Shown here piece after piece: positions 193 to 36,268 of a DNA stretch of 64,000 nt. The stretch lies in the NCBI RefSeq assembly GCF_031769215.1, contig NW_026782274.1, positions 496,001 to 560,000 of the forward strand, given 5' to 3'. The notes beneath the pieces were generated by a model that worked only from the letters and a program-made list of their open reading frames with translations, had not been told where the DNA came from and did no database searches. Both the position numbers and the translations under genes were made by a program. How positions within the stretch are numbered: the first letter of the stretch is position 1; the number at the start of each line of letters is the position of its first letter. The stretch is from Ylistrum balloti. Lineage: Eukaryota.

Positions 193-3100
193 AAAAAATG
201 GCGGGAAAATCCTGGATGCGAGGAGATGTTTCATCACATGAGTCTATTAACAATGGACAGTATGATGAAGTGTTTGTTTGGTCACCATAGCAACTGTCAG
301 CTGGAAACGTATGCTTTATTTGTAACAAAACCACAGTTGATGGTGTCTCGTTCTTAGTTTTCATATTAGATTGCTTTTTCGTACAAATTGATAATTTACC
401 GACATTGTTTGGTCCGAAGATAATCCTCATGAATAAATGCACATGGACTTCAAGAGGAAATAAATTACATTTTCGTCCCTCTATCAATAACTAATATGTT
501 ATGGGTTGTCTTTTCTCCACCAGGGTGCGCCCCGCGTACATCCAGTGTGTGTATGACGTCTCTGACCTCATCATCAAGAGGATCATGAATCCGCTTCATC
601 ACTACGGCTTCATATACTCTATGTCTGAAAACGGGTAACCATCACTTAACAATAGTCCGAGACTGGATCAATATAAACTTCGTACTCCTTGTCTGAAAAC
701 GGGTAAACATCACTTAACAATAGTCCGAGACTGGATCAATATAAACTTCATAAACTCCTTGTCTGAAAACGGGTAAACATCACTTAACTATAGTCCGAGA
801 CTGGATCAATATAAACTTCGTACTCCTTGTCTGAAAACGGGTAACTATCACTTAACAATAGTCCGAGACTGGATCAATATAAACTTCATAAACTCCTTGT
901 CTGAAAACGGGTAACCATCACTTAACAATAGTCCGAGACAGGATCAATATAAACTTCGTACTCCTTGTCTGAAAACGGGTAAACATCACTTAACAATAGT
1001 CCGAGACTGGATCAATATAAACTTCATATGCTCTATGTCTGAAAACGGGTAACCATCACTTAACTATAGTCCGAGACAGGATCAATATAAACTTCGTACT
1101 CCTTGTCTGAAAACGGGTAAACATCACTTAACAATAGTCCGAGACTGGATCAATATAAACTTCATAAACTCCTTGTCTGAAAACGGGTAAACATCACTTA
1201 ACTATAGTCCGAGACAGGATCAATATAAACTTCATATGCTCTATGTCTGAAAACGGGTAAACATCACTTAACAATAGTCCGAGACTGGATCAATATAAAC
1301 TTCATATACTCTATGTCTGAAAACGGGTAAACATCACTTAACAATAGTCCGAGACTGGATCAATATAAACTTCATATACTCTATGTCTGAAAACGGGTAA
1401 ACATCACTTAACAATAGTCCGAGACTGGATCAATATAAACTTCATATGCTCCATGTCTGAAAACGGGTAAACATCACTTAACAATAGTCCGAGACTGGAT
1501 CAATATAAACTTCATATGCTCTATGTCTGAAAACGGGTAAACGTCACTTAACAATAGTCCGAGACTGGATCAATATAAACTTCATATGCTCTATGTCTGA
1601 AAACGGGTAAACGTCACTTAACAATAGTCCGAGACTGGATCAATATAAACTTCATATGCTCTATGTCTGAAAACGGGTAACCGTCACTTAACAATAGTCC
1701 GAGACTGGATCAATATAAACTTCATATGCTCTATGTCTGAAAACGGGTAACCATCACTTAACTATAGTCCGAGACAGGATCAATATAAACTTCGTACTCC
1801 TTGTCTGAAAACGGGTAACCATCACTTAACAATAGTCCGAGACTGGATCAATATAAACTTCATATACTCTATGTCTGAAAACGGGTAAATGTATACCACA
1901 CATACATATTGTTCGATGGCTCAAGATGTTAAGATGTTTCTATAGTGTTTAATATTAGTCCATCCTCAAACCAGCCTTATCAGCAATTGGCATGGAGAAA
2001 TATACCCTATTCTGAAAACAAAGAAATGGAGGCTTTTTTTTTTATATCTATCGTCAAAATATCGTCATATTCTTGTACCATTATTTGCCTAAAACATTTT
2101 TGCCTCCTGGTTGTAAGACGCTCCAAGAAATGAATACTGCGTGCTTCATGAAATAATATATGGTTTGATTTTGCAGCATACATTACGAGGAGTGGTTGCA
2201 AAGGAAATGTGAACATTCCTAAATATAGCGCGCCTTTATTGAAAGATATAATTTAAGGACTCTTCTGACTTGCATTGTTAATACTGAGCAAGTGTTATCT
2301 AATATGATAATGCGTTCCGATTCTTTGTTGCAGACGTAAATTTAAATACGCTTGCGATACAATACACGGACACTCGAATATGTTGATAGAACAGAGGAGA
2401 AAATTGTTAGAGACAGAGAAATCCGGATCAAGAAACGTCGACTTTCTGGACATTTTACTCACGGCAAAGGTACCTATGTAAACATATATTCTGAATCGAT
2501 GAGCAAAGGCTTGGGAACAAGTAACAAAGTAATCGTGAGGAAAAACATGGCAGTACTGTTATACTGATGTTGTTTGTTTGCAAATCTACTGACATAAAGG
2601 AATGACAATGATTCCTAAGCTATATTAAGCTTGCATTTTTTCTGTGCGCGATGATAGCCGTTCACGTGATACGCAATAGCGCTATTTATTTCTCGAAATC
2701 GCCTCCCTCTCTACATTCAAATGAAACTATTGAAAGTTGGACACAAGACATAAGTGCCATCATTCTGTCATCACATCTTAATATGAATGTATTTGTACTC
2801 CCGTTGCAGGACTCGGACGGCCAAGGACTGAGTGACCAGGAGATTCAGGACGAGGTGGACACATTTATGTTTGCGGGTCATGATTCCACAGCCAGTACAT
2901 TGTCCTGGTGTCTTTATAACCTGGCCCTACATCCCGAGTATCAGGACCTGTGTCGGGAGGAGGTGGAGCGGGAATGGGGGGACAAGTCCGAGCTCACGTG
3001 GTAGGTCAGGTTTATCTGTCTACTACAACAATACTTATGTCTTACTGTTGTCAGGATTCATAAGATAGCTCGACTGATGATCGGCAACATGTCTACATTA

Positions 3101-3623: not shown

Positions 3624-3683
<60 letters not shown>

Positions 3684-6368: not shown

Positions 6369-8226
6369 CTACGAGAATTTTACAAGATTAGTGACGTAGC
6401 CATTAGCAATCACGTATCTGAAGACGTAGAAAAGAAGGACTAAGAAACATATTTTCTTGAAGAGAAGAATCCAGCCGTCGTAAAGTCCGTCCCTCTCTCC
6501 TTCCCCTGACTGTCGCGATTTCATAGGCAGATATGTATGTTCCTCCACCCTTTCGATCGCGTTCTTGGCACCTTCCCAAGAGCCGGGACCGTCCAGGCGC
6601 CATTGTACTGGGGTAGCTGGCCCAAAATACAGTTTATACCAAAGTTTCGGATCAGAGAAGAAGTGTTTCCAGAGGTCCGGTTTACATCCGATCATTGCAC
6701 TAAGTCGGTCGAGGTACTGAATGAAGTAAACCTGCAGACTATACCTGGGAGAGTCGACATATTTCGCTTTGATAAAATCTTTGCGTTTTTCTACATGGGC
6801 AAGACGTTTGGATGCGCTAGGTAACTTAGATTTTCCAGCAAACACCCTGGTGATACATCTTGCTTGCATTTCTAAAACTGGCGGAAGCGAGCCAAACGGT
6901 TGGACTAAGCCGACAACACCGAGGGTGCATGGGTTCAAATCAGTTGGAAACATCAGTTCGTACAGATAAGGATAATGTCCTTCAATTTTGATGATTCCAT
7001 CATCAAGAAAAGGAAAATCAAAGTTGAATCCCGTAGCAAGGATGACAACATCGATGTTCTTAAGAACTGAGCCGTCGTCGAATATAGCGCCATCTGTTGT
7101 GAACTCCTTCACATTGCACTTCACATTAATAGTGCCTAGTAGGATTCTGTTCGGAAGGTCGTCGCTAATAGTGACAACACCCGCGTCAAAGCAGTAGTTT
7201 GGCGACAGGCCGTAGTTGGAATGTTTATAGCGACGATTTATACGGTGGAAGAAAACGGGTCGCATGAGACTCCAAGGCAGGCTCTGGGAAAATCTGTTGA
7301 TGGCGAGATGATCAAACGGGACGCCGTACTCTGCAGCTCTCGAGATTACATATGTCCCTCGTCGGCTTGCTACATATACCTGCAAATAGAATTATTGAAA
7401 GAATTTCACTGATTAGACCGGAAAGTTTTCTGACTGGGCGTGAAATGACAGATACAATAGTTTAGCTTAGCCACATGCAGACCAAGTAAATGATTATATT
7501 TTCATCGTGCCCATTTTCAAATTTAAGGACTTCAAAACATATTGTGATAAACTTGTCCCCTTAATGGTCAAAACAAGATCATTGTACTCTTATGCTTACG
7601 TGTTCAGCATGACGACTCAACTCGCAGGCGACATCGGAGCCGGAATTACCAATGCCGATCACCAATATTCTCTTCCCTTCGAACCCATGGAAGTCCTTGT
7701 AATCGTGAGTGTGTATGACCTTGCCTTTGAATTTATCTAGACCAGAGAATGTCGGCACATTCGGAATACTGAGGTGTCCGTTACACACAATAACAAAATC
7801 AGTCTTCACATTCCGTGATTTGCCAGTGCTTAAATTCTTCACTGACGTCACCCAACTTCCGGTGTCGTCGAAATCGTCTGCCTTTTTAACGTCCTCAACA
7901 ATGTGGCTGAAAGTTATGTAGTTCATCAGGCCAAAATTTTCTGCATAGAGTTGGAGGTATTTCTTAAAGTGTTTGTGTCCCATGAAGTTTGGGAACTCTT
8001 TGGGGATCGGAAAGTCACTGTAACAGGTCATTTCTTTACTAGTGTTAATACTACATGAGTTGTAAAGGCTTGGGTCGCCATCTTTAGACCAGTTGTGGTA
8101 ATTCCAGAGTCCCCCAATGTCCGTATCCTTCTCAAAGCATATTGGTTCCATTCCCTCGTCCAGACATTGTTTGACCGCAGCCAGTCCGGCCACACCCGCC
8201 CCTATTACCAGCACTGTTTTTGCCAT
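6369..8226 (-). CDS. Flavin-containing monooxygenase (class B, FMO family), 545 aa. Coding exons 8226-7600 and 7379-6369
   Basis: GAGVAG (FAD site), FKGKVIHTHDYK (FMO fingerprint FxGxxxHxxxY), GIGNSG (NADPH site), LATGF, hydrophobic C-terminal anchor. One phase-0 GT-AG intron (7599-7380). A pyrimidine tract plus AG sits directly before the ATG, implying a 5'UTR intron. AATAAA on the minus strand at 6095-6090. Confidence 0.95.
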
Positions 8227-11569: not shown

Positions 11570-14500
11570 AATACCGCCATTCACGTGACCGTCGACATCT
11601 CTCAGACTTATTTCCAAGTTCAGTTCTGGAATTTTGATTCGGTAACGTATTACATGCTTTTATAAGTTGTTGAAAGCTAGAAATCCTTGTCGGCGATATT
11701 TTTGCAATATTTGGTTTTTTAAAGCTTTTTGACATAAACAGAATACATGTGAATGCCACATACATTAATTCATTCATCCATCCATCCACTCCATCATCAT
11801 CATCATCATCATCAGTTGACTAAATTCTTGACATCTATAAAAAGTGCAAGAATCAAAATCTTTTTGTATGTCTTTTACCATAGTCACCCCTCTATTAAAC
11901 CATGCTTGATTGAATATAACTGTTTTCCTTCCACCAATCCTCATTGAACCATAGAGAGGTTTCCCAAATATTACTTCTTATAATTTCTGTCCTAACCCTG
12001 TCATTTAATCTTATCCAGGCTGCAGAAACATCCTTCCAAAGTTTATTTTTACACAATTATGACATTTTTTAATATACTCCTTCTCCCTGGTAGATAACAA
12101 ATTCAGATCTGTGCAAGATTCAGGAATTACTTGCCATTTAGCTGTTTTCTGAAACAATCTTCTTACCCATCCCAGTTTCAAAGAATCAATAAATGCCCTT
12201 ACTATTTTCAGCCCTCCATCACAATAATTCTGAGTAACAATATCTCTCTTTACTTTATCAGTTTTACCATACCACAGAAAGTGAAAAAGAGTTGAATTCA
12301 GTTTAACAATGAAATTATCATCAGGGTTTGGCAATGCAATAAATAAATGATTAAATTGGGATATCATTAAAGACTTATTGAGATGAATTTTTCCCACAGG
12401 AGTAAGTGACCTCCTTCTCCATATTTTGACATTAGATTTTGATTTAATTAATTTCTTAATATAGTTTAATTTTGGAATTTTAAGTAAATTAACACTAAAT
12501 TGAACTGAAGTGTTAACTTAACTTTTCCCCACTGGAATTTCAACTATGGTAACAAAGTGTCCTCACTTTATTTTTTACTCCGGATCCAAACCACCTGTGT
12601 TTTGTCAATATTCAATTTCACGCCAGAGATTTTTGCGAAAGCATTTAATTCTACAATTGCTTCTCTCAATGACATTTCTGAACAATCTATATAAGGGAGG
12701 TGTCATCAGCATTTTGAAAGATTAGAATTAGAGTGTTACCGATATCTATCCCCATTTATTTCCTTATTATTTTTAAGTCTAATGGCCAAAATTTCTACAA
12801 ATAGAATACAAATATATGGAGCAAATTGATCGCCTTGACAACAGCCTCCTCTAATATTGATGAATGGAGACAAGGTTCCATCTTGATTTACAACTGCACT
12901 AACATTATTATGAAGCATCTTTATCCAATTTCTTCTGTCAGATGCGAAATTGAAATATTTAAAACCTTCATCAATAGATTTCCAAGAAACAGAATCAAAT
13001 GCTTTCTCAAAATCTATCAAAAACATACCCGGAATATTCATATTTTCAACATATAAAATTATATCATACACTAATCTCGTATTCTCACCAATGTAGTGAC
13101 CCGAAATAAAACCTGATTGATCCTCACCAATTAAAACATCTGAAATTTTCCTTATTCTGCTAGCTATTGTTCCTGATGCAATTTTGTATATGATATTCAA
13201 CAATATAATTGGGCGCCAACTTTTTAGGAACTGTCTTGGCTTATCTCCCTCAGAAACACAAATTCTGACCTCTTGTCTGTGTGTTATTGATAACTTGCCT
13301 GTCTCATAACTAAAATTGATTGACCTTATGATGACCCCTCCCCCCCCCCCCACACTTCCTCCCCATTCCACCTAATTGTCTCCAAAAGAATCTAACAGAA
13401 TTCCACACTGAAACTATCTGTACCAGGGCTTTTGTTTATTTTTCATGCTTTTCAATGTATTTGCTTCTTTGTCCATAGTTTTTCCCCGCTAATTTTGCTG
13501 CATCAGTGAGCCCCTATCATCAGTCTAATTTTGGAATAATTTTTGACGTAAAATTTTTACCTTCTAATCTGAGAAAGTATTTTGTAGTCTTTTCTCCTTC
13601 CTCTTGCTATCTTGCCCGAGATCTTACAGAGCTACCTTTAATCTTTTTTAATAACTGTTTCTTTCTGTGTGATGAGTATGCTATGGTTTCCAAAAATAGC
13701 TGATCATCAATGACATTTGCATTTGGAATATAATCTATATCTTGAAGACTATATATTAAAAGACAATATTGTATTTTCATCTCTAAAATGGTGTTACTTG
13801 AAAGCATTCCTCTTCATTCTGCATACAATAAGGATGGTTTGAATTTCCATAGTCCACTCCCCCATTTAAATTCATTAAATTTCAAGTGGAGAGTTGGAAA
13901 TGAGTGATCAGACCTTTGAACTGGCTCAATACTGGAGTTTGATGATAAATTTTGTGAAATAAGACAAAAATCTAATCTTGCTTGCTTTAATGGATTTTTT
14001 TTCTCCAACTATGTCTTCTCCTGTCAGGATGAACTCTCAATAAATATCTACCAATGAAAAACTTTCCATAATTTCTAATATTTTCTCTCTTGCCTTCAGG
14101 TTATTCGCATTTTTGTAGCTTCTGTCATAATCTAAATCTGGATCCAATACTAAGTTAGAATCTGTGATAAGTGTTATATTACATCCTTCCAGTATCTAGA
14201 GCTAAGACATTTCCTGAATTATCCCCTCTTTTCCCTTTTTAATCTTAATTTCGAAATTATCATTTATCAAAATAACTACCTCTCAAGAATTAGATCTAAA
14301 AGAGCTGAAACAACCATCGTAACCCCACTGATTTCTGATATGTTTGGTTTCCTTCCATGGAATGCGTGTCTTGTAAATCATAGCTACAGATTTTTTAAAA
14401 CTTGAAGTAAGAGAAAACATTAACGATACTCCCAAGACCCTGCCGATTGGCGGAGAGAACAGTTATACCTTCAATTACTAGCTACTTAAAATTACGGTGC

Positions 14501-16839: not shown

Positions 16840-18039
16840 TTAAACCTTGCGTTTAATGACGTAATACTGAAATATCCCGGAGTTGTCAGTGGCGACACCT
16901 ACAGATTGCACTAGACTAAACTTCTGCAATCGCCTGAAGTTAGATGATGACAGAAGAACTGGAGTGTGACCAAACGTAACCATGAACCCGTTCTCTCGAA
17001 CAGTTGGTAGTAATGCATCCAAAAGGACTTCAGCCTCGGTGGAAGTGACGACTTCAGAATTCAAGAAACGATTGAAGCACACATCAGCAGTTCCGGTTGG
17101 TATCTTTGGATCCATTGCATTTCCACAGTGCACTTCATCGACTCGTTCTCTAGCAAAATCAGCCATTTGTTGACTAAGATCTTGACCGAAAGTGTAACTT
17201 TCTGGAAATGCTTTCTGTAACGAAGAGAGAAACACCCCGGTAGAACAGGCGGGGTCGTACAACCTTCCCATTGTCATGGCAACACCACCCAAGAACTGAA
17301 CAGTATACTGTCTTATCCGTTCCTCTCCATGGCTGAGCATTGCATCATAGGTATCGTCAACCTTCCATCCCTCCGCTGGGGAACACAGCTCCTTTCTGGA
17401 GGACTCCCTAAGGAGTGGGAAGGGATAGATAATTTCGACTTTGGATGAGTCCCTAGTCATGATATCCTCAAACAGTTTAAGTTTCTCGGAATTACCTAAG
17501 GGATAATAACTGACCTGTACCTCCTTCTCAGTAATGCGCTCATCGTAAAACAAGCCCAGAATCATATCAGCTGTCACCAAGCTGCAGTGGAGTTCCGGTA
17601 TCTTCCCGGCAATCCAATAATCTGACAAAATCTTTCTTCCGACCAATCTCCACGAACCCGGAACACCAGGTTTTCCCACATCAAGGAAAAATACACTTTG
17701 TGGTAGGTGATGAAATGGCTCGTTAATACGCCTCAAGTCTCTTTCCACGATATTTTCCCATGGTATAACTCTCTCTGGAGATGTACCAGGTGGCATTTTC
17801 TTTTCTTCATATCTTCTAACCTCGCTTATGATGAGTGAGAGACATTTGTTGTCGAGGTGACTCTCAGTGGTCTTACTCAAAGCATCACATAGAAGCTTCT
17901 TCCCGGCATCCCAATTTCCTGATGACAGCAGCTTTCTCGCCTTGTGAAAGTCATTCCGGATTTCTGGGTCATGGATACTTTTGAATATACCATCGTAGCT
18001 TGTAATAGCGTCGGTACGGAGATCCAAGTCATCCGCCAT
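16840..18039 (-). CDS. Intronless class I SAM-dependent transferase, 399 aa from the Kozak-context ATG at 18039; likely 3-amino-3-carboxypropyl (ACP) transferase of the Nat/isonocardicin synthase type
   Basis: Single ORF; CAAC-ATG-G context at 18039; SAM motif I YDPACSTG, motif II GQDLS, RFLNSEVV, FGHTP; AATAAA on the minus strand at 16777-16772. The Nat resemblance is from recall of family motifs, not a search. Confidence 0.85.
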   Translation of the reverse strand: MADDLDLRTDAITSYDGIFKSIHDPEIRNDFHKARKLLSSGNWDAGKKLLCDALSKTTESHLDNKCLSLIISEVRRYEEKKMPPGTSPERVIPWENIVERDLRRINEPFHHLPQSVFFLDVGKPGVPGSWRLVGRKILSDYWIAGKIPELHCSLVTADMILGLFYDERITEKEVQVSYYPLGNSEKLKLFEDIMTRDSSKVEIIYPFPLLRESSRKELCSPAEGWKVDDTYDAMLSHGEERIRQYTVQFLGGVAMTMGRLYDPACSTGVFLSSLQKAFPESYTFGQDLSQQMADFARERVDEVHCGNAMDPKIPTGTADVCFNRFLNSEVVTSTEAEVLLDALLPTVRENGFMVTFGHTPVLLSSSNFRRLQKFSLVQSVGVATDNSGIFQYYVIKRKV

Positions 18040-18630: not shown

Positions 18631-21600
18631 ATGGCGTCAACTGGTGTCAGTATCATCATCCACGGTGTGTTGTACTTTCTGAAATATGTCAATTATATGG
18701 TGAGTATTACTAACTTTTCGTTTAAGATGTCTAAACATTCTGAAATGATTCAATTAGATATGATTTCTCAGCATCTTATGCTAATTTTTATGTTTAAAAA
18801 AACCTGAGAAATACATGCACACATGCGCAAGTCCCACATTACACTTTTGGGTATCACATGGTAAGAAATTGCTTGAGGGATTTGAAATGACGACTCTAAT
18901 GCTGGGCACAAAAAACAATATTTGTTTGATATTCAAGAGTTTATTTTCTACATCATGACTTTCGTGCATGATATAGACAACTGACAGACAAATGCACAAC
19001 ACAGGGTTTCCAGATTTGCAAATTGATGAAAATGATGGGAAGGTTTAAATGTCTTTATAACGATCTCGTCAGGAAATATTCGGGAAGCTGGACATGTATT
19101 GATGCTTGTTAATCTGCCTCTTGGTTCCGTATTTATTTACATTGTTCTGTTTTTGGGAACGTGACATTTTATATCAGTAAGACATCTAGAAGTAAGACAT
19201 CGAGATAGCAGTACATGGTTACCGCAATGTAAATTTCAATTCAGGTACAGGAAAAATCATTATCTTCTTAAACAAAGGTTATATCAAATTGTAAAATACT
19301 GGAGTGAAACATAAAAACCATAATCACAGAGTGTAATTAACCATACTTTCATTTGTTGCAGTGCTGCAGTACAACAGTACCAGAGACTGGCGCCATTGTC
19401 AATCTGCTTTTAAACCAACTGTTCGGAGACGACAAACTGAAAAAGCTAGAATACCTTTGTCAATTTTATCATAAATTTGGTCTGTTCAAATATGAAAAGA
19501 AAATATATCTGTTTGATGAGAAACTAGCACAAACTGCCATTCATAAACTAGACAAAGGAGCAGACAACTACTTAGAAGATTCTCCACTCAAAGATACGTT
19601 TTTAGGATCTTCTCAAAAAAGTCCAGAAACAAGACGTGCTATAGCTTCTATTTTTCGTAAAACTTCTATAGATGAAAGAGGTCATGTAATGATCCGTGAC
19701 CTTGACCTTTTGTGTCGAAATATGCAAGAGGTCAGTAGCAAGTCAAGACCAGTGAATATTACCCAGTTCAGCTTAAGACTCGCTCTGGACGTAGTCGGTC
19801 ACGTGCTATTGCATCTTGACCTTGGAGGACTAAAAGGTCATCAAGATCGTCTGCTTGATTCAATGATGACCATTCTGCACAGGTAGGTGAACAAGGAGCT
19901 CAAACGTCGACGTTGTTTACTGGAGATATCTAACCGTATATAAGTAGTTTTAAGATACCCTCCTTTCTTAACGGCTAGTTCATTAACTATTTTTAAAGGA
20001 AACAATATCCTACATTTTGGTTTTACTCTTGAAGCAGTGATAAAAGTCTTTTTAAATGTGGTTTTGTTGTAATGTTAATATGATGGAGAAAGGACGGAAA
20101 TTTTATTTTTTGACTTTGTTTATTATGTGACTTATTTTGTATATGTTTTCTGGAGGTGTTACGCTCTAGCCGAAATAACTACTAACAGCAGTGAGTTCAT
20201 ACGGGCAACCGAGAACCTGGACCGTCTGACGTCACAGATCTTAGAGAACGCACTCAACAAGGATGATCAGACGGAGGACAAGAGGCTGGTTTTCCAGCTT
20301 TACGAGGCTTGTGGCTTCGAACAGGTACATATTATATCGAAATATCTATTAACATTGTGCTTATAAAAATACTAGCAGTCTTATCTACAAATTAATGATT
20401 TGAAGTTATTGATTTTAAATATGTATGTAATAACATGAATTCTAAAGAATCATATATTGAATATATTTTTTTATCATTTACGATTCAAATTAATTAAGTT
20501 GTTTTAAAAAAAAGAGTTATAAGGTAAATTGACTTTCTGAGTTTTGATAACTCGCGGTTTTTATAAAAACGTTTAAATTCCCGGTGTTCCGTGTAATGTC
20601 GGGATATACTGTTGTTTCAGGCCAAAGACAACATGAAACTGTTTCTGATGGCTGGCACAGAAACCACAGCATCTACCTTGCCGGTTATATTTTACCTTCT
20701 TACCAAGTATCCTCACATCCAGGTAATCTTTGTCTCTTACCTGTAATGTTTGTTTATCGAGGTATCATCACATCCAGATAGCCATCCTGTCTTACCTGTT
20801 ATATTTGTTTATCAAAGTATCCGCATATCCAGGTAATTTTTGTCTCTTATATTTTACCTGTCTATCGAGGTATCCTCACATCCAGATAACCATCCTCTCT
20901 TAGTTGGTATATCTTACCTGTCTATCGAGGTATCCCCACATCCAGATAGCTACCCTGTCTCACCCGGTATATTTTACCTGTTTATCGAGGTATCCTCACA
21001 TCCAGATAACTATCTTGTCTTACCTGTTATATTTTACCTGTTTATCGAGGTATCCCCACATCCAGATAGCTACCCTGTCTCACCCGGTATATTTTACCTG
21101 TCTATCGAGGTATCCTCACATCCAGATAATCATCCTGTCTTACCTGTTCTATTTTACCTGTCTATCGATATATCCCGTCATTCCATGATTAACGATACAA
21201 AGTGTTCACTTGTCCTTCATTTCATTACTCCGTCATAATTTCGTTTATGTTCATCACTTCGGATACAGATATTGAACTGTAATACGGCAATGTACGAGGA
21301 TGTAACGATTAGTATACACACAACTATTGTTACATAATCATGCAAGTCTGCTTCTGATTTTAAAATGATAATTATTATTTACTAACTTTAATAAGCTTGA
21401 TTTAAACCTGGAGAACCTTGCAATGGGAATTTTTAGTTTACCCAAAGTGTTAACAATGCATTTTTTGCATGAATTATTACTATAACATTAAGAGTTTGAA
21501 TTCGTGGATTTCGACTTGGTTAATCATTTTTTTGGCACTCGAAAACAGCTTTATCTTTTGGAAAAAGACTAATAGGATAAAACTGCAAAATTATAAGGCA

Positions 21601-23234
21601 CAACGACCCACTTTTTAATCATGAAAATGTTCATATGAAAGCATAAAGTCTTTTTAAAAGATTAGTACACGATCAAATAAATCATTTTCAAAATTTTCAC
21701 TTTTTGGTTGCAGTGCAGTTTTAAGATCGTAAAATTAAATGAAAATCTAACATTTCCCCTTAATTTTCTATCATTTAGTTGTCATTCTACTACCTTTTAA
21801 TAAAAGAGGAAAACATATTGCCTCGAAAATAACAAAGAATGCCTATTATGGAGTAAAAAAATAATAATGATTGATGAAGGGTGGATTATCTCCCGTTACA
21901 TATATATATTCTGCATTTTTGCTTTTAAAATTGAATTTGATCAATTTGGCCTCTAGACCTTTATACATCCTTTACAACCTTAACAAAGTCGATAACACTT
22001 ACAAAATATAAACATCTCCTTCGTTCCCTGCAGAAACTTTTGTGTTTTTCCGACACATCTAGTTCTTCATAGTAGGTCACGTGATATACTATATGTCTGT
22101 TTTTATAATATCACACTTCTAGTTTAGAACATTCTTCAGATGATGTAAATGATAATGTTCGCTTTATTTGTTTGTTTGGAACGTTGGAAACAAACTCACA
22201 AAATACGTTTATGTACAATTAGATGGAACTCCAGGCTGAAGCTGATGAAAATATAGACAGTTTACGGAAAGACCCGAACTTCCCTTTGCCGAAGATAGAT
22301 AGCGTTATGAAGGAGGTACTCCGATTGTATCCTATTGCGCCTTTCATCAGTAGACAGAACCACGGCCCCGTGACTATAGGCAAGATTGATCTGCAGGAAC
22401 ATGTAAGTTAAACGTTACAGTCGTGTTATTTGAACACCTAGTTATGTTACCATAGTGAAATACATCTACATGAATTATGGTTACGTTACCATAGTAACTA
22501 CTTATACGATTTTCTTAACAATTAGGTTGTTATGGCAATCACTCAGGTCATATTTAAACATCTTATCATAGTGTTGCATTCATGTTGTCGTTATAGTTTA
22601 GATATAGTCAAGTGACAATAACAATGTATAGTTACCATTACAACTCTACGTTTAATGTCTGTTGTCAATTTTCCCATTCATAACGGTCACAACGTCTTTC
22701 TAAAAAATAATGCATATGTTATTTTGTATGTTTGGATAATTTAGCAAATGTTCGAAGCACGGCTAATTTATCATGGATATCAGGACCTAGGTAATCCTGT
22801 TCAATATTTTATTCAATGCCAAAAATGACTAACATCAGTTCCTTGGAATGTAAACAGTATACTAATATTGGCTTTTTTGTCGATTGCAGAGCGACCTGCT
22901 GGTATTTACCTGGGGGATTCATAGATCACCATACGCGTGGGACCATCCGCATGACTTCGTACCTTTTCGCTTTTACGAAAGCACTTCCAAAAATCATAGT
23001 TCAAATTTATACATTCCATTCGGTGCCGGATCGCGAGTTTGTATTGGTCAGCACCTAGCGTGGCTCGAGATCCGATTGGCTATTGCGATTTTGCTCAATA
23101 AATTTGATTTCAGGCCAACAGAGGAGACTCCTGACCTTCGGTTTGTGGTAGACTGGACACATGCCGTAGTTCATCCGGACAAAGACATGTTGTTCATGGC
23201 TGTTCCACGTACCAAACCATTTAATATCACTTGA
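18631..23234 (+). CDS. Divergent cytochrome P450, 461 aa. Exons 18631-18699, 19362-19882, 20156-20324, 20621-20722, 22223-22402, 22890-23234
   Basis: Exons join in phase (1386 nt). Hydrophobic N-terminus, AGTETT (I-helix), EVLR (ExxR), PFRF, FGAGSRVCIG (heme Cys). AATAAA at 23532 and 23619. The exon-3 acceptor is an uncommon GAG. Family not recognisable by eye. Confidence 0.9.
20675..21180 (+). repeat. 55-60-bp minisatellite derived from the 3' end of P450 exon 4 and its donor
   Basis: TATCCTCACATCCAG-like core at 20708 (real exon end), 20763, 20818, 20871, 20931, 20991, 21051, 21111. ORFs across the array repeat exon-4 peptide pieces (YPHIQ, LPVIFYL). Confidence 0.93.
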
Positions 23235-31258: not shown

Positions 31259-34200
31259 ATGCCTGTGATTGATATCCCTGACATTACGTCATGCACGAGC
31301 TATATCGCCGCGCTAGATTCCGATCGGTCAATTCCTAGCGCTGTCATTGGAGAAGGTAATCTGCTTCTGTCTTGCCTAGAATATTTGACAGATGCCAGCT
31401 TCACTATTTCAGCCGTCTTCACAGATACACCTGTAGTCAAAACCTTCTGCGAAGAGAAGAAAATACTTCAGTGGAAAAGAGGAACAGATATCGAACATGC
31501 CCTGAGAGATATTCCAATTGACTATCTTTTTAGTATATCTAATCCTAGAGTTTTGACAGATTCTGTATTACAAATACCCAGAAAACTGTCAATCAACTAC
31601 CATGATTCACCACTTCCCAGATATGCTGGAATCCACGCAACCAGCTGGGCCATCATCAATGGCGAATCGAACCATGGTATTTCCTGGCACGTAATCGAGA
31701 CGGGTATCGACACTGGAGATATTCTCCAGACAAGAGCAGTTAAAATTGATCCTGACGATTCTGCATTCACATTAAATATGAAATGCCAAGAAGCAGCCAA
31801 ATCAGCATTCCAAATTCTGATCAAGGATGTTAAACAGGACTGCATTAACCGAACGACACAACCGGTTTCTGGAAGGTCGTATTACGGGTTGCATGCCATA
31901 CCGCCAAACATTGGAGTCCTTAATTTCCAGACGTCCTGTACAAATATCTGCAATCTTGGAAGGGGACTGGAGTTCGGAACTCATGACAATGCACTTGGAA
32001 GCCCCAAAGTTATGACATCAACAGGCGATTTTGTGCTCGTCACAAATGTCGAAGAATCTAATTGCAGTTTTGACGAACATGTTAAACATGGAACTATCAC
32101 AGAAATAGTTGACGATACTTTGGTTGTCAAAACGCAGGGAAACTCGGTTTTGCTGTCAATTACAAAATTGGATGGATCCCATCTGTCGCCATCAGAATAC
32201 AGCGATCTTGGGATATCGGTTGGTGAAAAGCTTTCAAGTAATTTTGCGGTAGACACGGAAAATCTGACACAAATAAGAAAGAAGGAGACATTTTGGAGAA
32301 GAAAGTTAAAGATTTATGATCCAACGACATTTTTCCGACAAAGAATGAATGTGGTTGCAGGTATCATAGATGTTTCTACAGCAATCAACGTCAAGTCGAT
32401 CGTTATTCCGCTACCCGTCCCAAACATGAATGGACACAGCTTCCATACACATACTTGTGAACTTCTTATGTCAGCATTTGTTGCATTCATCGGACGAATG
32501 ACTTGTAACTCGAATGTCTCTCTCGGTATCCTGGCAAACAAGTCGACTGTACCCGAAATGGCAAGAGGACTTTACTCTGACATCTGTCCAGGAGTATTCA
32601 CCGTCGATCTACAGCAGAAAACACATGTTGTCTTGCATGACCTTTACGAAATGATAAAAACTTACAGAGAGGCACAATCGTTCTTAGTAGATGCGTTTTA
32701 CAGGTACCCTGAACTCCGTGGACAAAAGAGAACACCTCACCATAACATAGCGATAGGCCAAATTCCTAGTCATGCGTCAGCTACCGGTGTTGCACAGCAC
32801 GTTCTTCATGACTGCAACATATTGCTACTGTTTAATGACGACGGAGATGAGATGCATTTGATGTACAAGGAAAAGATCGGTCAAGATTTCCAATATATCA
32901 GTGATGTTCTTCAGCACTTCCCAACATTTCTCACTACTAGTGACCTGAATCAGCCTTTGCACGAGACTCATCTAGTCTCAGACGAGGAACTTAAACAACT
33001 TTATCTACAGCCTCTTCCTTTCAAGCCGTCAACCAAAAGCGTTTATGACGTTTTCGAAGAACAGTGTAGGTCTAGTCCAAATAACATAGCTCTGCGGTCA
33101 TCAGCTACATCATACACCTACAACCAGTGTAACGAGTTAGCAATGAAGGTTTCATGCCTTCTTGATGCCACATATGAAGATGAAAGAATCATTGGACTTC
33201 ATTTTCCAAATTCAATGGAATATGTAGTCTCCGTCATCGGCGTTTTGAAAACCAATCGTGCATTTCTGCCACTTCCCATAGATTACCCTGAAGAAAGGAT
33301 GACTTTCACTCTGCGAGATGCAAAAGTCCATAGTATGTTGACTACCGCCTCAGTTTATGAAAACCTGAAATCTAAGGGATTTTCATTGACACAGGTAGGA
33401 GCAGATGCTGTGCAGATAGATCGTAATGAAGTAATACTTGTTCGATTTGCGAAAAATGAGAACAAGGTGAAAGGAAATGAAAATGACTTTGTCCATATCA
33501 TTGATGGAAAGGCAAAAAAAGGCGGCGTCCAGACTGGCAGAATTCTGAATGGACATGAGGAATGTGGAAGGACAAAAAATGGAGAATGCGATGCTGATGA
33601 CTTTAAGATTCTCCAGAACAATGGCTTTACTTCAAAAATGACGAGTCAGATATTAGATGAGGAACTTTGTTACGTGATGTATACGTCAGGTTCCACTGGT
33701 AGACCTAAGGGAGTTCAAGTAAGCCACTCCGGTGTCGTCAATCTCGCTAAAGCGCAGATAGAGCTCTGGAGTCTTCACGATGGTGATGTGATTGCCCAAT
33801 TCGCCTCCATTGGATTCGACGCGACGGTATCTGAAATATTCACAGCCCTATTTTCTGGTGCAACTCTCGTTACTCTTTCCGACGAAGAACGTTTAGGCCA
33901 GGAATTCATCCGTACGTTAAACATGCTGGATGTGAATACAATCACACTGCCCCCATCCGCCCTCAACATATACAGTCCAAACGACCTACCCAAACTAGAA
34001 AAGGTTGTTACCGCTGGAGAAGCCTGTTCGCTAGGAACTGCCCTCAAATGGACGGTCGACAACAAGACAATAAGATTCTTCAACGCATACGGCCCGACTG
34101 AAACAACTGTTTGTGCAACATGTTATGAATTCAAATCGTCCGATGTCCACGTCGACAACACTCAAGACTTACCAATTGGCATGGCCATACCTGGCATGAG

Positions 34201-36268
34201 TGTATATCTTTTTGACAACTTCATGAAACCAGTTCCTCCTGATGTTGTTGGCGAGATCTACGTAGGAGGTATTGGTGTATCCAAGGGATACATCGGTCAC
34301 GCAGCGGAGCACAACTTGGAACGATTTGTCCAGAATCCAATGACAGATCAGCTTTGCCTGTTATACAAAACAGGCGATCACGCGTTTCAATCAAATGATG
34401 GCAATATCACTTACATCGGGAGGTTGGATGACATGATAAAGATCAGGGGCCAACGAGTTGACCTTAGTGAAATTGAGCAAGTTCTGATTCAACATACAAA
34501 GGTGGAACTTGCTGTCGTTGTAGCACATAGATGTACAGACTCGAATGAGATTAGTATAGCGGCGTATGTGGCACCTTCTTTCGTGTACTTGTCGGAATTA
34601 CGGGAGTACTTGACGAAAGCTCTTCCAAAATACATGATACCGACGTTCATTAAGAAAATTGAGGTAGCTGACTTCCCAATGACACTGAATGGCAAAATAG
34701 ACAGAAAACGTCTTGAAAAAGACGAATCTGTACATGAACAATCAAGATTTGGTGGAGGCAGTCATCTAAACGAAACGCAACTTGCTATAGCTCAACTTTG
34801 GTGTACAGTTCTCAAACTTAACGAATCGATAATACATGAATTTCACCGCCAGACATCTTTCAGTGAACTCGGCGGCAACTCTTTGCAGTTGGTGCTCCTA
34901 CAGCGTACGTTAGAAGACAAGCTCCATATCCAGTTGTCGTTTACAGACCTAGGTATGGCAGATACGATAGAGGAATTCTGCGACGTCATCAGAAGAAAGA
35001 AAGATATGCTCCGAAGATCTAATCAAAACAATTCAAATGATCTGCGTGATCTTCGTCAGGTAATAGTGCAGGATTCTATTCTAGATCCATCGATCATACC
35101 TCAACATGCTAGGCGTGGCTCTATTAAGTTCAGTCACTTCTCGGCGTTTGTACAGAAATGTTCCATGAAATACCCAAGGAACGCTCTAATGTCAGGCGTG
35201 ACCGGATTCCTGGGGGCGTATCTCCTGTCTGAACTTCTTGAACAAACAAACGCTCATGTGTGTTGTATGGTTCGAGAATCTACAGAGGCAAGGGGATTCG
35301 GTAGAATAGTTGAAAATCTCAGAAAGTACAACTTATGGAAAGTAGAATATGGGAGTAGAATCGCGGTAGTGATATCCGACCTATCACAGGAAAATCTCGG
35401 TATAGCGCCAGACATTTACACGGCACTTTGCAACGTCATCGATGTTGTATTCATGAATGCAGCCAAGATGAATTTCAACACTGATTATGATGACCACAAG
35501 GTTGCAAATGTCGACAGTACCAAGGAATTCATCAAATTCGCTGTAACAGGCACTCAGAAATATATATTTTCAACGTCATCGTTGAGCGTTTTCCTCTTCC
35601 CCAACAGCCCTTCCAGCACACCACCAACCAATCGAATGTGTTATGAGACCGAGTTCTGGGATGACCCTTGCACCTTAGAAGGGGGCTATGGAAAAAGCAA
35701 ATGGGCAAGTGAAAAATTGGTCGTGCAAGCACTCGAGTACCTCCCTGGCGGAGCTATATTCCGACCAGCAAGAATATCTGGATGCTCTTTTGACGGCGCT
35801 GGTCCAAGGAACGACCTTTTCGCGTCTACCTTAATCGGTATGACGCAATTAGGGTCGTTTCCCGACATGGACTTTCCCTACGATCTCACACCAGTGGACT
35901 ATGTAGCCAAGGCAATGGTGGAAATCTCTCTGCAGATTTGCAACGACAGTAACCATCATGAACATGTTTATCATCTGTTCAATTCTCAGACAATTCCTTT
36001 TAAGGACATTTTCAAAGGAATGGGTCTGAAGTCTCTTCCTCTTGAACAATGGCGCCAAGAACTCCGAAATGCATCTGACGACAGCAAGGTCCTTATCCCG
36101 TTTACACCGTTTTTCCATTCCGAGTTTTGGGACAAGGCGCCTCACTGGCCAGTATTTGACACTTCAAACACAGACAGACTTACCAGCGACCGCACAAAGG
36201 AACTATTGAAACCTTCAAAAGACCTCTTGTGCTTGTACAAAACATATTTTGGTCTAAATACCAAATAG
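31259..36268 (+). CDS. Monomodular NRPS, 1669 aa: formyltransferase (N and C subdomains), relic condensation lobe, adenylation (Tyr-type code), PCP, terminal NAD(P)H thioester reductase (FmtATR-like)
   Basis: F domain: NYHDSPLPRYAG and GIDTGD (Asn113, His115, Asp151). A domain: YVMYTSGSTGRPKG, FDAT, NAYGPTE, GEIYVGG..GY, YKTGD, GRLDDMIKIRGQRVDLSEIE, LPKYMIP, NGKID. T domain: LGGNSL (Ser1208). R domain: SGVTGFLG, STSS, YGKSK. Uninterrupted 5010-nt ORF; spliceosomal acceptor TTTATTACAG ends at 31245. Confidence 0.97.
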   Translation: MPVIDIPDITSCTSYIAALDSDRSIPSAVIGEGNLLLSCLEYLTDASFTISAVFTDTPVVKTFCEEKKILQWKRGTDIEHALRDIPIDYLFSISNPRVLTDSVLQIPRKLSINYHDSPLPRYAGIHATSWAIINGESNHGISWHVIETGIDTGDILQTRAVKIDPDDSAFTLNMKCQEAAKSAFQILIKDVKQDCINRTTQPVSGRSYYGLHAIPPNIGVLNFQTSCTNICNLGRGLEFGTHDNALGSPKVMTSTGDFVLVTNVEESNCSFDEHVKHGTITEIVDDTLVVKTQGNSVLLSITKLDGSHLSPSEYSDLGISVGEKLSSNFAVDTENLTQIRKKETFWRRKLKIYDPTTFFRQRMNVVAGIIDVSTAINVKSIVIPLPVPNMNGHSFHTHTCELLMSAFVAFIGRMTCNSNVSLGILANKSTVPEMARGLYSDICPGVFTVDLQQKTHVVLHDLYEMIKTYREAQSFLVDAFYRYPELRGQKRTPHHNIAIGQIPSHASATGVAQHVLHDCNILLLFNDDGDEMHLMYKEKIGQDFQYISDVLQHFPTFLTTSDLNQPLHETHLVSDEELKQLYLQPLPFKPSTKSVYDVFEEQCRSSPNNIALRSSATSYTYNQCNELAMKVSCLLDATYEDERIIGLHFPNSMEYVVSVIGVLKTNRAFLPLPIDYPEERMTFTLRDAKVHSMLTTASVYENLKSKGFSLTQVGADAVQIDRNEVILVRFAKNENKVKGNENDFVHIIDGKAKKGGVQTGRILNGHEECGRTKNGECDADDFKILQNNGFTSKMTSQILDEELCYVMYTSGSTGRPKGVQVSHSGVVNLAKAQIELWSLHDGDVIAQFASIGFDATVSEIFTALFSGATLVTLSDEERLGQEFIRTLNMLDVNTITLPPSALNIYSPNDLPKLEKVVTAGEACSLGTALKWTVDNKTIRFFNAYGPTETTVCATCYEFKSSDVHVDNTQDLPIGMAIPGMSVYLFDNFMKPVPPDVVGEIYVGGIGVSKGYIGHAAEHNLERFVQNPMTDQLCLLYKTGDHAFQSNDGNITYIGRLDDMIKIRGQRVDLSEIEQVLIQHTKVELAVVVAHRCTDSNEISIAAYVAPSFVYLSELREYLTKALPKYMIPTFIKKIEVADFPMTLNGKIDRKRLEKDESVHEQSRFGGGSHLNETQLAIAQLWCTVLKLNESIIHEFHRQTSFSELGGNSLQLVLLQRTLEDKLHIQLSFTDLGMADTIEEFCDVIRRKKDMLRRSNQNNSNDLRDLRQVIVQDSILDPSIIPQHARRGSIKFSHFSAFVQKCSMKYPRNALMSGVTGFLGAYLLSELLEQTNAHVCCMVRESTEARGFGRIVENLRKYNLWKVEYGSRIAVVISDLSQENLGIAPDIYTALCNVIDVVFMNAAKMNFNTDYDDHKVANVDSTKEFIKFAVTGTQKYIFSTSSLSVFLFPNSPSSTPPTNRMCYETEFWDDPCTLEGGYGKSKWASEKLVVQALEYLPGGAIFRPARISGCSFDGAGPRNDLFASTLIGMTQLGSFPDMDFPYDLTPVDYVAKAMVEISLQICNDSNHHEHVYHLFNSQTIPFKDIFKGMGLKSLPLEQWRQELRNASDDSKVLIPFTPFFHSEFWDKAPHWPVFDTSNTDRLTSDRTKELLKPSKDLLCLYKTYFGLNTK

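What the first reader, a model, noticed from the sequence alone, without database searches (positions are those of the whole stretch)
193..36268. Animal-encoded biosynthetic gene cluster: NRPS + ACP-transferase + FMO + two P450s (bursatellin/oxazinin-type pathway)
Seen in sequence: five enzyme genes of five different types lie within 36 kb with no recognisable housekeeping gene between them. Housekeeping genes resume at ZNRD2 (40.5 kb). Inferred chemistry: the NRPS gives N-formyl-tyrosinol; the SAM enzyme adds a homoserine ether to the phenol; FMO and P450 convert the amino-acid end of that ether to an aldoxime and then a nitrile; a P450 hydroxylates the benzylic carbon. The product would be N-formyl-beta-hydroxy-O-(2-cyanoethyl)tyrosinol, the structure of the mollusc metabolite bursatellin, whose aryl ether core is shared by mussel oxazinins. 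From recall, a mollusc bur-ox pathway with FmtATR and ACT enzymes has been reported, so the core may be known. A complete physical cluster that also supplies oxidases for the remaining steps is rare in animals and makes those steps testable.
Basis: partly seen in the sequence, partly recalled or inferred. Interest (0 to 1): 0.95.

Follow-up and report, generated by a model that had tools for sequence, protein, structure and literature searches.

The report
Scallop bursatellin-oxazinin (bur-ox) gene cluster
This is a scallop's copy of the already published mollusc "bur-ox" gene cluster that makes bursatellin/oxazinin-type tyrosine nitriles; the only possibly new point is that a second, CYP4-type P450 has stayed beside the cluster's flavin monooxygenase in four bivalve orders.

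Summary
Five intact enzyme genes lie in window 193-36268:
- a CYP4F-like P450, whose 5' end is cut by the window start
- an FMO
- an isonocardicin-synthase-like aminocarboxypropyl transferase (ACT)
- a divergent 461-aa P450 ("P450b"), head-to-head with ACT
- an intronless Fmt-A-T-R NRPS with a Tyr-type specificity code

Only retroelement debris lies between them, and ZNRD2 follows the NRPS.

The interpretation as a bursatellin/oxazinin cluster is right but not new. Venugopalan & Schmidt (JACS 2025, PMC11869996) described bur-ox as fmt-atr + act + p450 + fmos, including in scallops. A 2026 paper's supplement shows the Pecten maximus cluster. The window is from another pectinid: its NRPS is 82% identical to Pecten and 58% to Mytilus californianus.

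What I add:
- **CYP4 orthogroup.** The CYP4-like gene belongs to a distinct bivalve orthogroup (SH-aLRT 98-100) with an I-helix GHDST signature. It sits next to the bur-ox FMO(s) in Pectinida, Mytilida, Unionida and Venerida.
- **Animal precedent.** A millipede FMO plus CYP4GL4 converts an amino acid to an aldoxime and then a nitrile.
- **NRPS detail.** FmtATR carries a vestigial condensation-domain C-lobe between its Fmt and A domains.

The scan's other notes on this topic all lie on this same window, not on other DNA.

The parts
193..5204 (+). CYP4F-like P450, 3' two-thirds of the gene. Exons at 193-308, 524-634, 2334-2469, 2810-3000, 3239-3372, 3962-4026, 4653-4738 and 5039-5204. The 5' exons lie upstream of the window. 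The I-helix reads FMFAGHDST. The heme loop FIPFSMGPR|NCIGQAFA is split by an intron.
   Evidence: orthogroup and linkage
6369..8226 (-). Class B flavin monooxygenase, 545 aa, convergent with the CYP4 gene. Exon 1 is 7600-8226 and exon 2 is 6369-7379. Motifs present: GAGVAG, FKGKVIHTHDY, GIGNSG.
12011..13371 (-). LINE-type reverse-transcriptase remnants. These are filler and not part of the pathway.
   Evidence: RVT_1, E 8.9e-18
16840..18039 (-). ACT: an intronless, SAM-dependent 3-amino-3-carboxypropyl transferase, isonocardicin-synthase-like, 399 aa.
18040..18630 (.). 591-bp divergent intergenic region between ACT and P450b, a probable shared bidirectional promoter (inferred). The head-to-head pairing is conserved in Mizuhopecten, Argopecten, Ruditapes and Sinanodonta.
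18631..23234 (+). P450b: a divergent 461-aa P450 with six GT-AG exons at 18631-18699, 19362-19882, 20156-20324, 20621-20722, 22223-22402 and 22890-23234. Motifs: AGTETTA, EVLR, FGAGSRVCIG. The N-terminus is short and only weakly hydrophobic, with no PPGP hinge.
31259..36268 (+). FmtATR NRPS, a single 1669-aa ORF. Domains: Fmt at nt 31472-31810; vestigial condensation-domain C-lobe at nt 32246-32992; A domain at nt 33053-34696 (code DASTVAAVCK); T domain at nt 34787-34990 (GGNSL); R domain at nt 35195-35917 (GVTGFLG, YGKSK).
40484..42303 (-). ZNRD2/SSSCA1-like gene marking the end of the cluster. It has the same position and opposite-strand orientation after the NRPS in Argopecten.

Best explanation
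The stretch is a pectinid scallop's orthologue of the published mollusc bur-ox (bursatellin-oxazinin) biosynthetic gene cluster.

**Steps shown for orthologues in the literature.** The T-R part of FmtATR reduces N-formyl-tyrosyl thioester by four electrons to N-formyl-tyrosinol. ACT uses SAM to put a 3-amino-3-carboxypropyl (homoserine) ether on the phenol.

**Steps inferred.**
- The Fmt and A domains formylate and load tyrosine.
- The FMO N-oxidises the amino-acid end of the ether and, with decarboxylation, gives an aldoxime.
- A P450 dehydrates the aldoxime to the nitrile.
- A P450 hydroxylates the benzylic carbon.

My best guess is that the FMO-linked CYP4F-like enzyme is the aldoxime dehydratase and that the ACT-linked P450b is the hydroxylase. 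The CYP4F-like gene is probably a real, conserved member of the cluster in bivalves, and not a chance neighbour.
For: **Match to the published cluster.**
- Domain content and order match the published cluster.
- The window's NRPS is 82, 80 and 77% identical to the Pecten, Mizuhopecten and Argopecten proteins, 58% to Mytilus californianus FmtATR and 49% to Haliotis.
- The A-domain code is DASTVAAVCK or DASTIAAVCK in all seven mollusc orthologues aligned.
- The Fmt N-x-H and Asp loop, the T-domain Ser, and the R-domain TGxxGxxG and YxxxK motifs are all present.
- ACT matches isonocardicin synthase 8zhu at E 5.6e-45. Its relatives are annotated 'isonocardicin synthase-like' in many molluscs.

**Conserved gene order.**
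- The P450b/ACT divergent pair is conserved in three bivalve orders.
- The whole locus is collinear with Argopecten chromosome CM084266.1.

**CYP4 linkage.**
- The CYP4 gene is adjacent to the bur-ox FMO(s) in Argopecten, Mytilus galloprovincialis, Potamilus and Ruditapes.
- The linked copies form one clade (SH-aLRT 100, stem length 0.46), apart from 45 other CYP4 representatives.
- With the Magallana gigas and Potamilus representatives added, the clade has SH-aLRT 98 against 70 others.
- The clade has a specific I-helix GHDST, against GHDTT in 150 motif instances in the other sequences.

**Chemical precedent in an animal.** The millipede FMO MOxS makes an aldoxime from an amino acid, and CYP4GL4 dehydrates it to the nitrile (PMC12671775).
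Against: - No expression, metabolite or enzyme data exist for this species or for any of the three oxidases.
- The bur-ox paper's main text names only one P450 and assigns nitrile formation to the FMOs.
- No CYP4 copy lies within 10 kb of the FMO in Saccostrea.
- In Haliotis the P450 next to the FMO pair is clan-2-like, not CYP4.
- Only one FMO is present here, against two in Mytilus, Potamilus and Haliotis.
- The linked CYP4 sequences from other species are pseudo-proteins stitched from tblastn hits, and the trees are quick searches on 215-330 columns.
- The CYP4 gene is truncated by the window edge, so its intactness is unproven.
Confidence: 0.88

Rival explanations
1. The cluster is bur-ox, but the CYP4F-like gene is only a passenger. 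Its place next to the FMO is inherited microsynteny with no role in the pathway. P450b and the FMO(s) do all the oxidative tailoring, as the published model proposes.
For: - The published main text lists one P450 and two FMOs and assigns the nitrile to the FMOs.
- Saccostrea has no CYP4 copy within 10 kb of the FMO.
- Haliotis has a different P450 clan at that position.
- CYP4 genes are numerous in molluscs, and the nearest outgroups are ordinary CYP4F fatty-acid hydroxylase-like proteins.
Against: - Adjacency is kept in four bivalve orders despite changes of orientation. It is convergent in scallop, mussel and unionid but tandem in Ruditapes.
- The orthogroup is single and well separated, with its own I-helix change.
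- A CYP4-clan enzyme with the needed activity is known in another invertebrate.
Confidence: 0.4
2. The scallop cluster makes a related but different end product, such as a non-hydroxylated, non-nitrile or oxazinin-type tyrosinol ether. On this reading the oxidases have roles other than those the reader assigned, for example the reverse assignment of the two P450s.
For: - Only one FMO lies at this locus, while other taxa have two.
- Scallops carry a second ACT-FMO locus elsewhere.
- The paper found oxazinins, not bursatellin, in bivalves. It notes that ACT is substrate-promiscuous and that the reaction order is unresolved.
Against: The core enzymes and the Tyr specificity code are conserved with those of taxa in which the family's metabolites were found.
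Confidence: 0.3
3. The bacteria-like genes (NRPS, ACT, P450b) come from bacterial contamination or a symbiont contig and are not in the animal genome.
For: - The NRPS and ACT genes are intronless.
- Their nearest non-mollusc relatives are bacterial.
Against: - P450b, the FMO and the CYP4 gene have GT-AG introns.
- LINE fragments and animal genes (ZNRD2) flank and interrupt the locus.
- G+C is a uniform 31-44%.
- The locus is collinear on chromosome-scale assemblies of other scallops.
Confidence: 0.01

Closest known systems
bur-ox cluster of molluscs (Venugopalan & Schmidt, J Am Chem Soc 2025, PMC11869996; also rediscovered by SynBGC, PMC12833800, whose supplement shows the Pecten maximus cluster)
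   Same: - FmtATR NRPS with a Tyr-type A domain
- isonocardicin-synthase-like ACT
- a short, divergent P450 next to ACT
- an animal-type FMO
- intron-bearing animal context
- wide distribution in bivalves and gastropods
   Different: - There is one FMO at this locus, not two.
- The NRPS and ACT genes are intronless here, as the NRPS is in Mytilus californianus.
- A CYP4F-like P450 lies beside the FMO. The paper's main text does not mention it, and I could not see its figures or supplement.
Millipede cyanogenesis enzymes ChuaMOxS (FMO) and CYP4GL4 / CYP30008A2 (PMC12671775)
   Same: An animal class B FMO and a CYP4-clan P450 are proposed to act in series: amino acid to aldoxime to nitrile. This is a resemblance in how the pair would work, not family membership.
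   Different: - The millipede substrate is free phenylalanine, not an O-aryl homoserine.
- No clustering with the CYPs is mentioned for the millipede FMO in what I read.
- No orthology is shown, because I had no millipede sequences.
- Activity of the mollusc enzymes is untested.
Linear gramicidin synthetase LgrA initiation module (F-A-T; PDB 6mfz, 5es5)
   Same: It is the best solved-structure match. It has a formyltransferase domain fused to an A-T module that formylates the loaded amino acid.
   Different: - FmtATR ends in a thioester reductase and is a single module.
- It has about 390 extra residues between Fmt and A. These comprise a weak Formyl_trans_C-like segment and a condensation-domain C-lobe.
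- This arrangement is shared with bacterial F-A-T-R proteins such as P0327.
Isonocardicin synthase (NAT; PDB 8zhu)
   Same: It is a SAM-dependent transfer of a 3-amino-3-carboxypropyl group to a phenol oxygen. Homology over residues 112-397 has E 5.6e-45.
   Different: - The mollusc enzyme has an extra N-terminal region of about 110 residues.
- It acts on tyrosinols, as shown for the Mytilus orthologue in the paper and not here.
CYP4F subfamily P450s (vertebrate CYP4F3/4F22-like, annelid CYP4F)
   Same: - These are the nearest named relatives, at 46-50% identity over the C-terminal 232 residues.
- The heme loop is FxPFSxGxRNCIGQxFA.
   Different: - The first Thr of the I-helix is Ser (GHDST) across the orthogroup.
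- The Glu that covalently links heme in many CYP4s is Ala in the two scallops.
- The genes are linked to a natural-product cluster.

Membership tests
bur-ox (bursatellin-oxazinin) gene cluster | Monomodular NRPS with Fmt-A-T-R domain order | tested here: met
   Pfam finds Formyl_trans_N at residues 72-184, AMP-binding at 599-1011 with its C-terminal part, PP-binding at 1177-1244 and NAD_binding_4 at 1313-1553. The protein is 58% identical to Mytilus californianus FmtATR over 98% of its length.
bur-ox (bursatellin-oxazinin) gene cluster | Tyrosine-activating A domain | tested here: inconclusive
   The ten code residues, read by anchoring on A4, A5 and A10 motifs, are DASTVAAVCK. They are identical or V/I-equivalent in all seven mollusc orthologues. 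That this string is a Tyr code, and the GrsA numbering behind it, rest on my memory of Stachelhaus et al. and on the paper's antiSMASH call for Mytilus. No predictor was run here.
bur-ox (bursatellin-oxazinin) gene cluster | Isonocardicin-synthase-like aminocarboxypropyl transferase in the same locus | tested here: met
   Match to PDB 8zhu at E 5.6e-45. Orthologues are named 'isonocardicin synthase-like' in Ylistrum, Argopecten, Ruditapes, Haliotis and Crassostrea virginica. The gene lies 13 kb from the NRPS.
bur-ox (bursatellin-oxazinin) gene cluster | Short, divergent P450 close to ACT that lacks a typical membrane anchor | tested here: met
   P450b is 461 aa and lies 591 bp head-to-head with ACT. 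Its N-terminal 15-residue hydropathy peaks at 1.45 and it has no PPGP hinge. The paper's claim that the P450 is 'bacteria-like' was not tested. The best PDB matches of the C-terminal exon are eukaryote-type P450s.
bur-ox (bursatellin-oxazinin) gene cluster | Animal-type FMO gene(s) in the locus | tested here: met
   One 545-aa FMO lies 8.6 kb from ACT. It is 88% identical to the Argopecten neighbour of ACT and about 43% to vertebrate FMO5. There is only one copy here, against two in Mytilus.
bur-ox (bursatellin-oxazinin) gene cluster | Enzyme activities (tyrosinol formation, O-aminocarboxypropylation) and presence of the metabolites | not testable with these tools
   These were shown for the Crassostrea virginica T-R construct and Mytilus californianus ACT in PMC11869996. 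There are no data for this species.
Cytochrome P450 family 4 (CYP4F-like) | P450 fold motifs and more than 40% identity to CYP4 members | tested here: met
   Pfam p450 hits on two exons. Motifs EVDTFMFAGHDST, ESQRLFP and FIPFSMGPRNCIGQAFA are present. Identity to CYP4F-like representatives is 46-50% over 232 residues. Only a partial sequence is available.
Class B flavin-containing monooxygenase | FAD GxGxxG, FxGxxxHxxxY and NADPH GxGxxG motifs | tested here: met
   GAGVAG, FKGKVIHTHDY and GIGNSG are present in exon 1. The Pfam FMO-like profile is covered full-length across the two exons.
Aldoxime-forming FMO / aldoxime-dehydrating CYP4 pair (millipede MOxS and CYP4GL4) | Demonstrated conversion of amino acid to aldoxime to nitrile, or orthology to the characterised enzymes | not tested
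This is a works-like analogy only.
NRPS condensation (C) domain | Two-lobed chloramphenicol-acetyltransferase-like fold with an HHxxxDG catalytic motif | tested here: not met
   Only the C-terminal lobe is present. Model residues 146-394 align to EntF 177-434 (Z 16.1, rmsd 3.3, 217 residues) and to the LgrA C domain 943-1199 (Z 15.8). No HHxxxD[GA] motif occurs anywhere in the protein. It is a vestigial, non-catalytic remnant.

The most novel reading that the evidence does not exclude
A dedicated bivalve CYP4F-derived orthogroup (I-helix GHDST) has been kept beside the bur-ox FMO(s) since before the split of pteriomorph and heteroconch bivalves. It would be the missing enzyme that, with the FMO, turns the O-homoserine ether into the 2-cyanoethyl ether through oxidative decarboxylation to an aldoxime and then P450-catalysed dehydration. 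That would be a second, independent animal FMO + CYP4 route to nitriles, convergent with the millipede MOxS/CYP4GL4 pair. It would complete the bursatellin pathway, leaving P450b as the benzylic hydroxylase.
Probability: 0.35. Interest if true: 0.6.

Novelty: already known. Interest (0 to 1): 0.35.

Why it matters
Animal-encoded NRPS clusters are rare, and bur-ox is one of the few that have been characterised. This locus confirms that scallops carry the complete, intact set in about 36 kb, but that has been published.

The useful residue of this work is practical. It names a concrete, conserved candidate for the uncharacterised nitrile-forming or hydroxylating steps: the FMO-linked CYP4F-like orthogroup, alongside P450b and the FMO. 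It gives exon models for all the genes. It also points to a biochemical precedent that makes a three-enzyme reconstitution on the known ACT product a straightforward experiment.

The vestigial C-lobe in FmtATR hints that the enzyme descends from a bacterial F-(C)-A-T-R synthetase. It may also matter for the expression problems the authors reported with full-length FmtATR.

Tried and rejected
1. **phmmer of the 65-aa I-helix exon of the CYP4 gene against 1.84 billion representatives.** The exon is too conserved to separate orthologues by score. No full-length representative stood out. I therefore stitched linked copies from the loci and used trees instead.
2. **PDB search with the N-terminal exon of P450b.** It found nothing meaningful. 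The Atlas feature searches only said 'P450'. So I did not test the paper's claim that P450b is bacteria-like.
3. **Finding the Mytilus ACT/P450 context, to decide which P450 the paper drew.** Cluster names did not identify a Mytilus ACT. The 10-kb flanks of the Mytilus californianus NRPS are empty.
4. **Supplementary material.** The bur-ox paper's supplement is not held. The SynBGC supplement holds only figure legends. I therefore cannot say whether the CYP4 gene is already drawn there.
5. **A second FMO or other paralogous fragments in the window.** None found.
6. **Bacterial contamination.** Rejected on introns, LINEs and conserved chromosomal context.
7. **The Haliotis P450 beside the FMO pair as a CYP4 orthologue.** Rejected. 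Its N-terminus has the PPGP/PVIGN pattern of clan-2 P450s, a judgement from my knowledge of P450 motifs, and it has no tblastn similarity to the linked CYP4s.
8. **Extracting the specificity code by alignment to 1AMU.** Not possible with the alignments shown, so I used motif anchoring.
Full report
**What is in the window.**

The window is AT-rich animal DNA (G+C 0.30-0.44) without assembly gaps.

The NRPS at 31259-36268 (+) is a single 1669-aa ORF. Its Pfam domains are Formyl_trans_N (72-184), AMP-binding (599-1011, plus AMP-binding_C), PP-binding (1177-1244) and NAD_binding_4 (1313-1553).

The ORF at 16840-18039 (-) has only weak methyltransferase Pfam hits. It matches the solved isonocardicin synthase (8zhu) at E 5.6e-45 over residues 112-397. 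Its mollusc relatives are annotated 'isonocardicin synthase-like'.

Two ORFs at 7579-8226 and 6369-7385 (-) cover the FMO-like Pfam profile at positions 1-211 and 208-530. With a GTAAGC donor and a TTGCAG acceptor they join into a 545-aa FMO (exons 7600-8226 and 6369-7379). This is the length of the Argopecten orthologue.

**The two P450 genes.**

P450b starts 591 bp from ACT on the opposite strand. I derived a six-exon, all-GT-AG model spanning 18631-23234. It gives an open 461-aa frame with AGTETTA, EVLR and FGAGSRVCIG motifs. The annotated Mizuhopecten, Ruditapes and Sinanodonta orthologues are 462, 453 and 454 aa. The N-terminus is short and only moderately hydrophobic and has no proline hinge. 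This fits the paper's description of a P450 lacking the usual anchor.

The other P450 runs from the window edge to 5204 (+) in at least eight GT-AG exons. It has CYP4 hallmarks: EVDTFMFAGHDST and FIPFSMGPR|NCIGQAFA. Its nearest named relatives are CYP4F-like. Its first ~140 codons lie outside the window.

Between the genes there are only LINE reverse-transcriptase fragments and satellites. No further copies of any cluster gene are present. ZNRD2 follows on the minus strand at about 40.5-42.3 kb.

**What it is.**

[quoted passage not shown] They describe the bur-ox cluster as:
- fmt-atr;
- an isonocardicin-synthase-like act;
- a P450 close to act that looks globular and bacteria-like;
- two animal-type fmos.

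They show that a Crassostrea virginica T-R construct reduces N-formyl-tyrosyl thioester to the alcohol. They also show that Mytilus californianus ACT makes the phenolic homoserine ether. They propose that the P450 and FMOs install the hydroxyl and nitrile groups. They report the cluster in mussels, oysters, clams, scallops and gastropods.

A later paper used the cluster to validate a synteny tool. Its supplement lists Pecten maximus and Argopecten irradians and illustrates the Pecten cluster (PMC12833800).

The window's NRPS is 82% identical to the Pecten maximus protein, 80% to Mizuhopecten, 77% to Argopecten, 58% to Mytilus californianus and 49% to Haliotis. The genome is therefore another pectinid and the locus is an orthologue of a published cluster.

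**Functional motifs in the NRPS**:
- Fmt INYHDSPLPRYAG and GIDTGDIL;
- A3 YTSGSTGRPKG;
- T-domain GGNSL;
- R-domain GVTGFLG and YGKSK.

The ten specificity positions, read by motif anchoring, are DASTVAAVCK. The same string, or its V/I variant, is found in all seven mollusc orthologues aligned. That this is a tyrosine code rests on my memory and on the paper's antiSMASH prediction.

**Synteny.**

Using ACT, FMO and NRPS relatives as handles, I fetched ±10 kb around them in other molluscs.

| Species (order) | Arrangement found |
|---|---|
| Argopecten irradians, CM084266.1 (Pectinida) | Whole locus collinear: CYP4 (-), FMO (+), an uncalled but intact ACT ORF (+), 5' end of P450b (-); ~19 kb further the NRPS, then ZNRD2 |
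| Mizuhopecten (Pectinida) | P450b head-to-head with ACT; NRPS on the same 312-kb contig |
| Ruditapes (Venerida) | CYP4 (+), FMO (+), ACT (-), P450b (+) within 24 kb |
| Sinanodonta (Unionida) | P450b / ACT head-to-head |
| Potamilus (Unionida) | FMO, FMO, CYP4 (convergent); consecutive locus tags run ACT ...024261, FMO ...024263, CYP4 ...024265 |
| Mytilus galloprovincialis (Mytilida) | FMO, FMO, CYP4 (convergent) |
| Saccostrea (Ostreida) | No CYP4 within 10 kb of the FMO |
| Haliotis asinina (gastropod) | FMO, FMO, then a 500-aa P450 with a clan-2-like N-terminus |

Scallops also carry a second ACT-FMO pair on another chromosome, followed by a C-type lectin gene.

**Is the CYP4 gene more than a neighbour?**

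Over the C-terminal 232 residues the window protein compares as follows:
- 79% identical to the Argopecten linked copy;
- 67% to the Mytilus linked copy;
- 55% to the Ruditapes linked copy;
- at most 50% to any of the CYP4 representatives of 380 aa or longer, among the 150 best hits, that phmmer found in a 1.84-billion-protein library.

In a maximum-likelihood tree the four linked copies form one clade (SH-aLRT 100, stem 0.46) apart from 45 other sequences. When shorter representatives are added, the Potamilus cluster neighbour and a Magallana gigas protein (K1QQU8) join them (SH-aLRT 98 against 70 others).

Every member of this clade has GHDST in the I-helix. The other representatives show GHDTT in 150 motif instances and GHDTV in 4. 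The residue changed is the first Thr of the 'acid-alcohol' pair. From general P450 knowledge, this Thr is the conserved threonine involved in oxygen activation.

This is a single bivalve-wide orthogroup that has stayed beside the bur-ox FMO(s) in four orders despite local inversions. I read that as moderate evidence of functional linkage. It is not proof.

Caveats:
- the non-window sequences are stitched from tblastn segments;
- the trees are quick searches;
- flanks were limited to 10 kb;
- I could not see the published figures, which may already show this gene.

**How it most likely works.**

Shown for orthologues: reductive release of N-formyl-tyrosinol and O-aminocarboxypropylation.

Inferred:
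1. The FMO N-oxidises the alpha-amino group of the homoserine ether. With decarboxylation this gives the aldoxime.
2. A P450 dehydrates the aldoxime to the 2-cyanoethyl ether.
3. A P450 hydroxylates the benzylic carbon.

An animal precedent for the first two steps now exists. In the millipede Chamberlinius, the FMO MOxS makes phenylacetaldoxime from phenylalanine. CYP4GL4 (CYP4 clan) or CYP30008A2 (CYP2 clan) then dehydrates it to the nitrile in an NADPH-dependent reaction (PMC12671775).

The supporting observations are the convergent CYP4/FMO pair on one side, the divergent P450b/ACT pair on the other, and the altered oxygen-activation residue in the CYP4. I give this assignment about 0.35. 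The published alternative (FMOs alone make the nitrile, one P450 hydroxylates) and the reverse assignment are not excluded.

**A side result on the NRPS.**

LgrA aligns to residues 87-184 and again from residue 576 onward. That leaves about 390 residues with only a weak Formyl_trans_C hit. The segment is present in all mollusc FmtATRs and in bacterial F-A-T-R proteins.

An AlphaFold2 model built on 34 homologues has mean pLDDT 84 and pTM 0.80. Residues 146-394 of the model, which are protein residues ~330-578, superpose on the C-terminal lobe of condensation domains: EntF 177-434 at Z 16.1 and rmsd 3.3 Å over 217 residues, and the LgrA C domain 943-1199 at Z 15.8. No HHxxxDG motif exists in the protein. 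FmtATR therefore contains a vestigial, non-catalytic half C domain ahead of the A domain. The paper's Fmt-A-T-R description does not mention it.

**Verdict.**

The finding's interest score of 0.95 is not justified.
- What remains of modest interest is the conserved CYP4F-like orthogroup as a testable candidate for the missing tailoring step, and the NRPS C-lobe remnant.

Noticed in passing
window 32246-32992 (NRPS residues ~330-578); weak Formyl_trans_C-like part at about 31904-32176: FmtATR has about 390 residues between the Fmt and A domains that LgrA lacks. By predicted fold, the second half is the C-terminal lobe of an NRPS condensation domain (Z 16.1 to EntF, 15.8 to the LgrA C domain), with no HHxxxDG motif anywhere in the protein. 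The segment is conserved in all mollusc FmtATRs and in bacterial F-A-T-R homologues.
   Followed up: yes
window 2810-3000 (CYP4 exon with the I-helix); L003, L005, L007; P0402, P0412: The FMO-linked CYP4 orthogroup has GHDST where other CYP4 representatives have GHDTT (150 motif instances). The two scallops also replace the heme-linking Glu by Ala (FMFAGHDST).
   Followed up: yes
window 20684-21176: A 60-bp-unit minisatellite in intron 4 of P450b begins inside the 3' end of exon 4 (exon end 20722). It repeats that exon's last codons, translated '...YPHIQ', several times. I did not check whether the repeats also carry the donor site and so offer cryptic splice sites.
   Followed up: partly
window 608-1889: A large satellite lies in an intron of the CYP4 gene: 70/138-bp unit, about 18.5 copies, 93% matches.
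   Followed up: no
L001 / L004 (Argopecten CM084271.1, 27.72-27.75 Mb); Mizuhopecten P0002 and P0123 on a 675,784-bp contig: Scallops have a second, paralogous ACT-FMO pair on another chromosome. It has the same order and strand and is followed by a C-type lectin gene, with no P450 or NRPS within 10 kb. ACT there is 73% and FMO 75% identical to the window's proteins.
   Followed up: partly
L009 21944-22265 (Haliotis asinina CM074533.1): In this abalone the tandem bur-ox-type FMO pair is followed by a 500-aa P450 whose N-terminus (…LPPGPRAWPVIGNLL…) looks like CYP clan 2, not CYP4. In the millipede, a clan-2 P450 is the second aldoxime dehydratase.
   Followed up: partly
window 33359-33658 (NRPS residues ~701-800): A stretch inside the A domain, between the A2 and A3 motifs, is rich in K/N/G/E. 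It shows no conservation among seven mollusc orthologues (0 of 100 columns) and is absent from LgrA. It is probably a disordered insertion loop.
   Followed up: no
window 45984-47494 (-) and 12011-13371 (-): There are two LINE-like reverse-transcriptase remnants (RVT_1, E 6.2e-27 and 8.9e-18). One lies inside the cluster between the FMO and ACT genes.
   Followed up: no
L003 754-1950 (Argopecten CM084266.1): An intact 399-codon ACT ORF, 77% identical to the window's ACT, has no gene call on record at the orthologous Argopecten locus. Only the paralogue on the other chromosome appeared as a protein in my search.
   Followed up: partly
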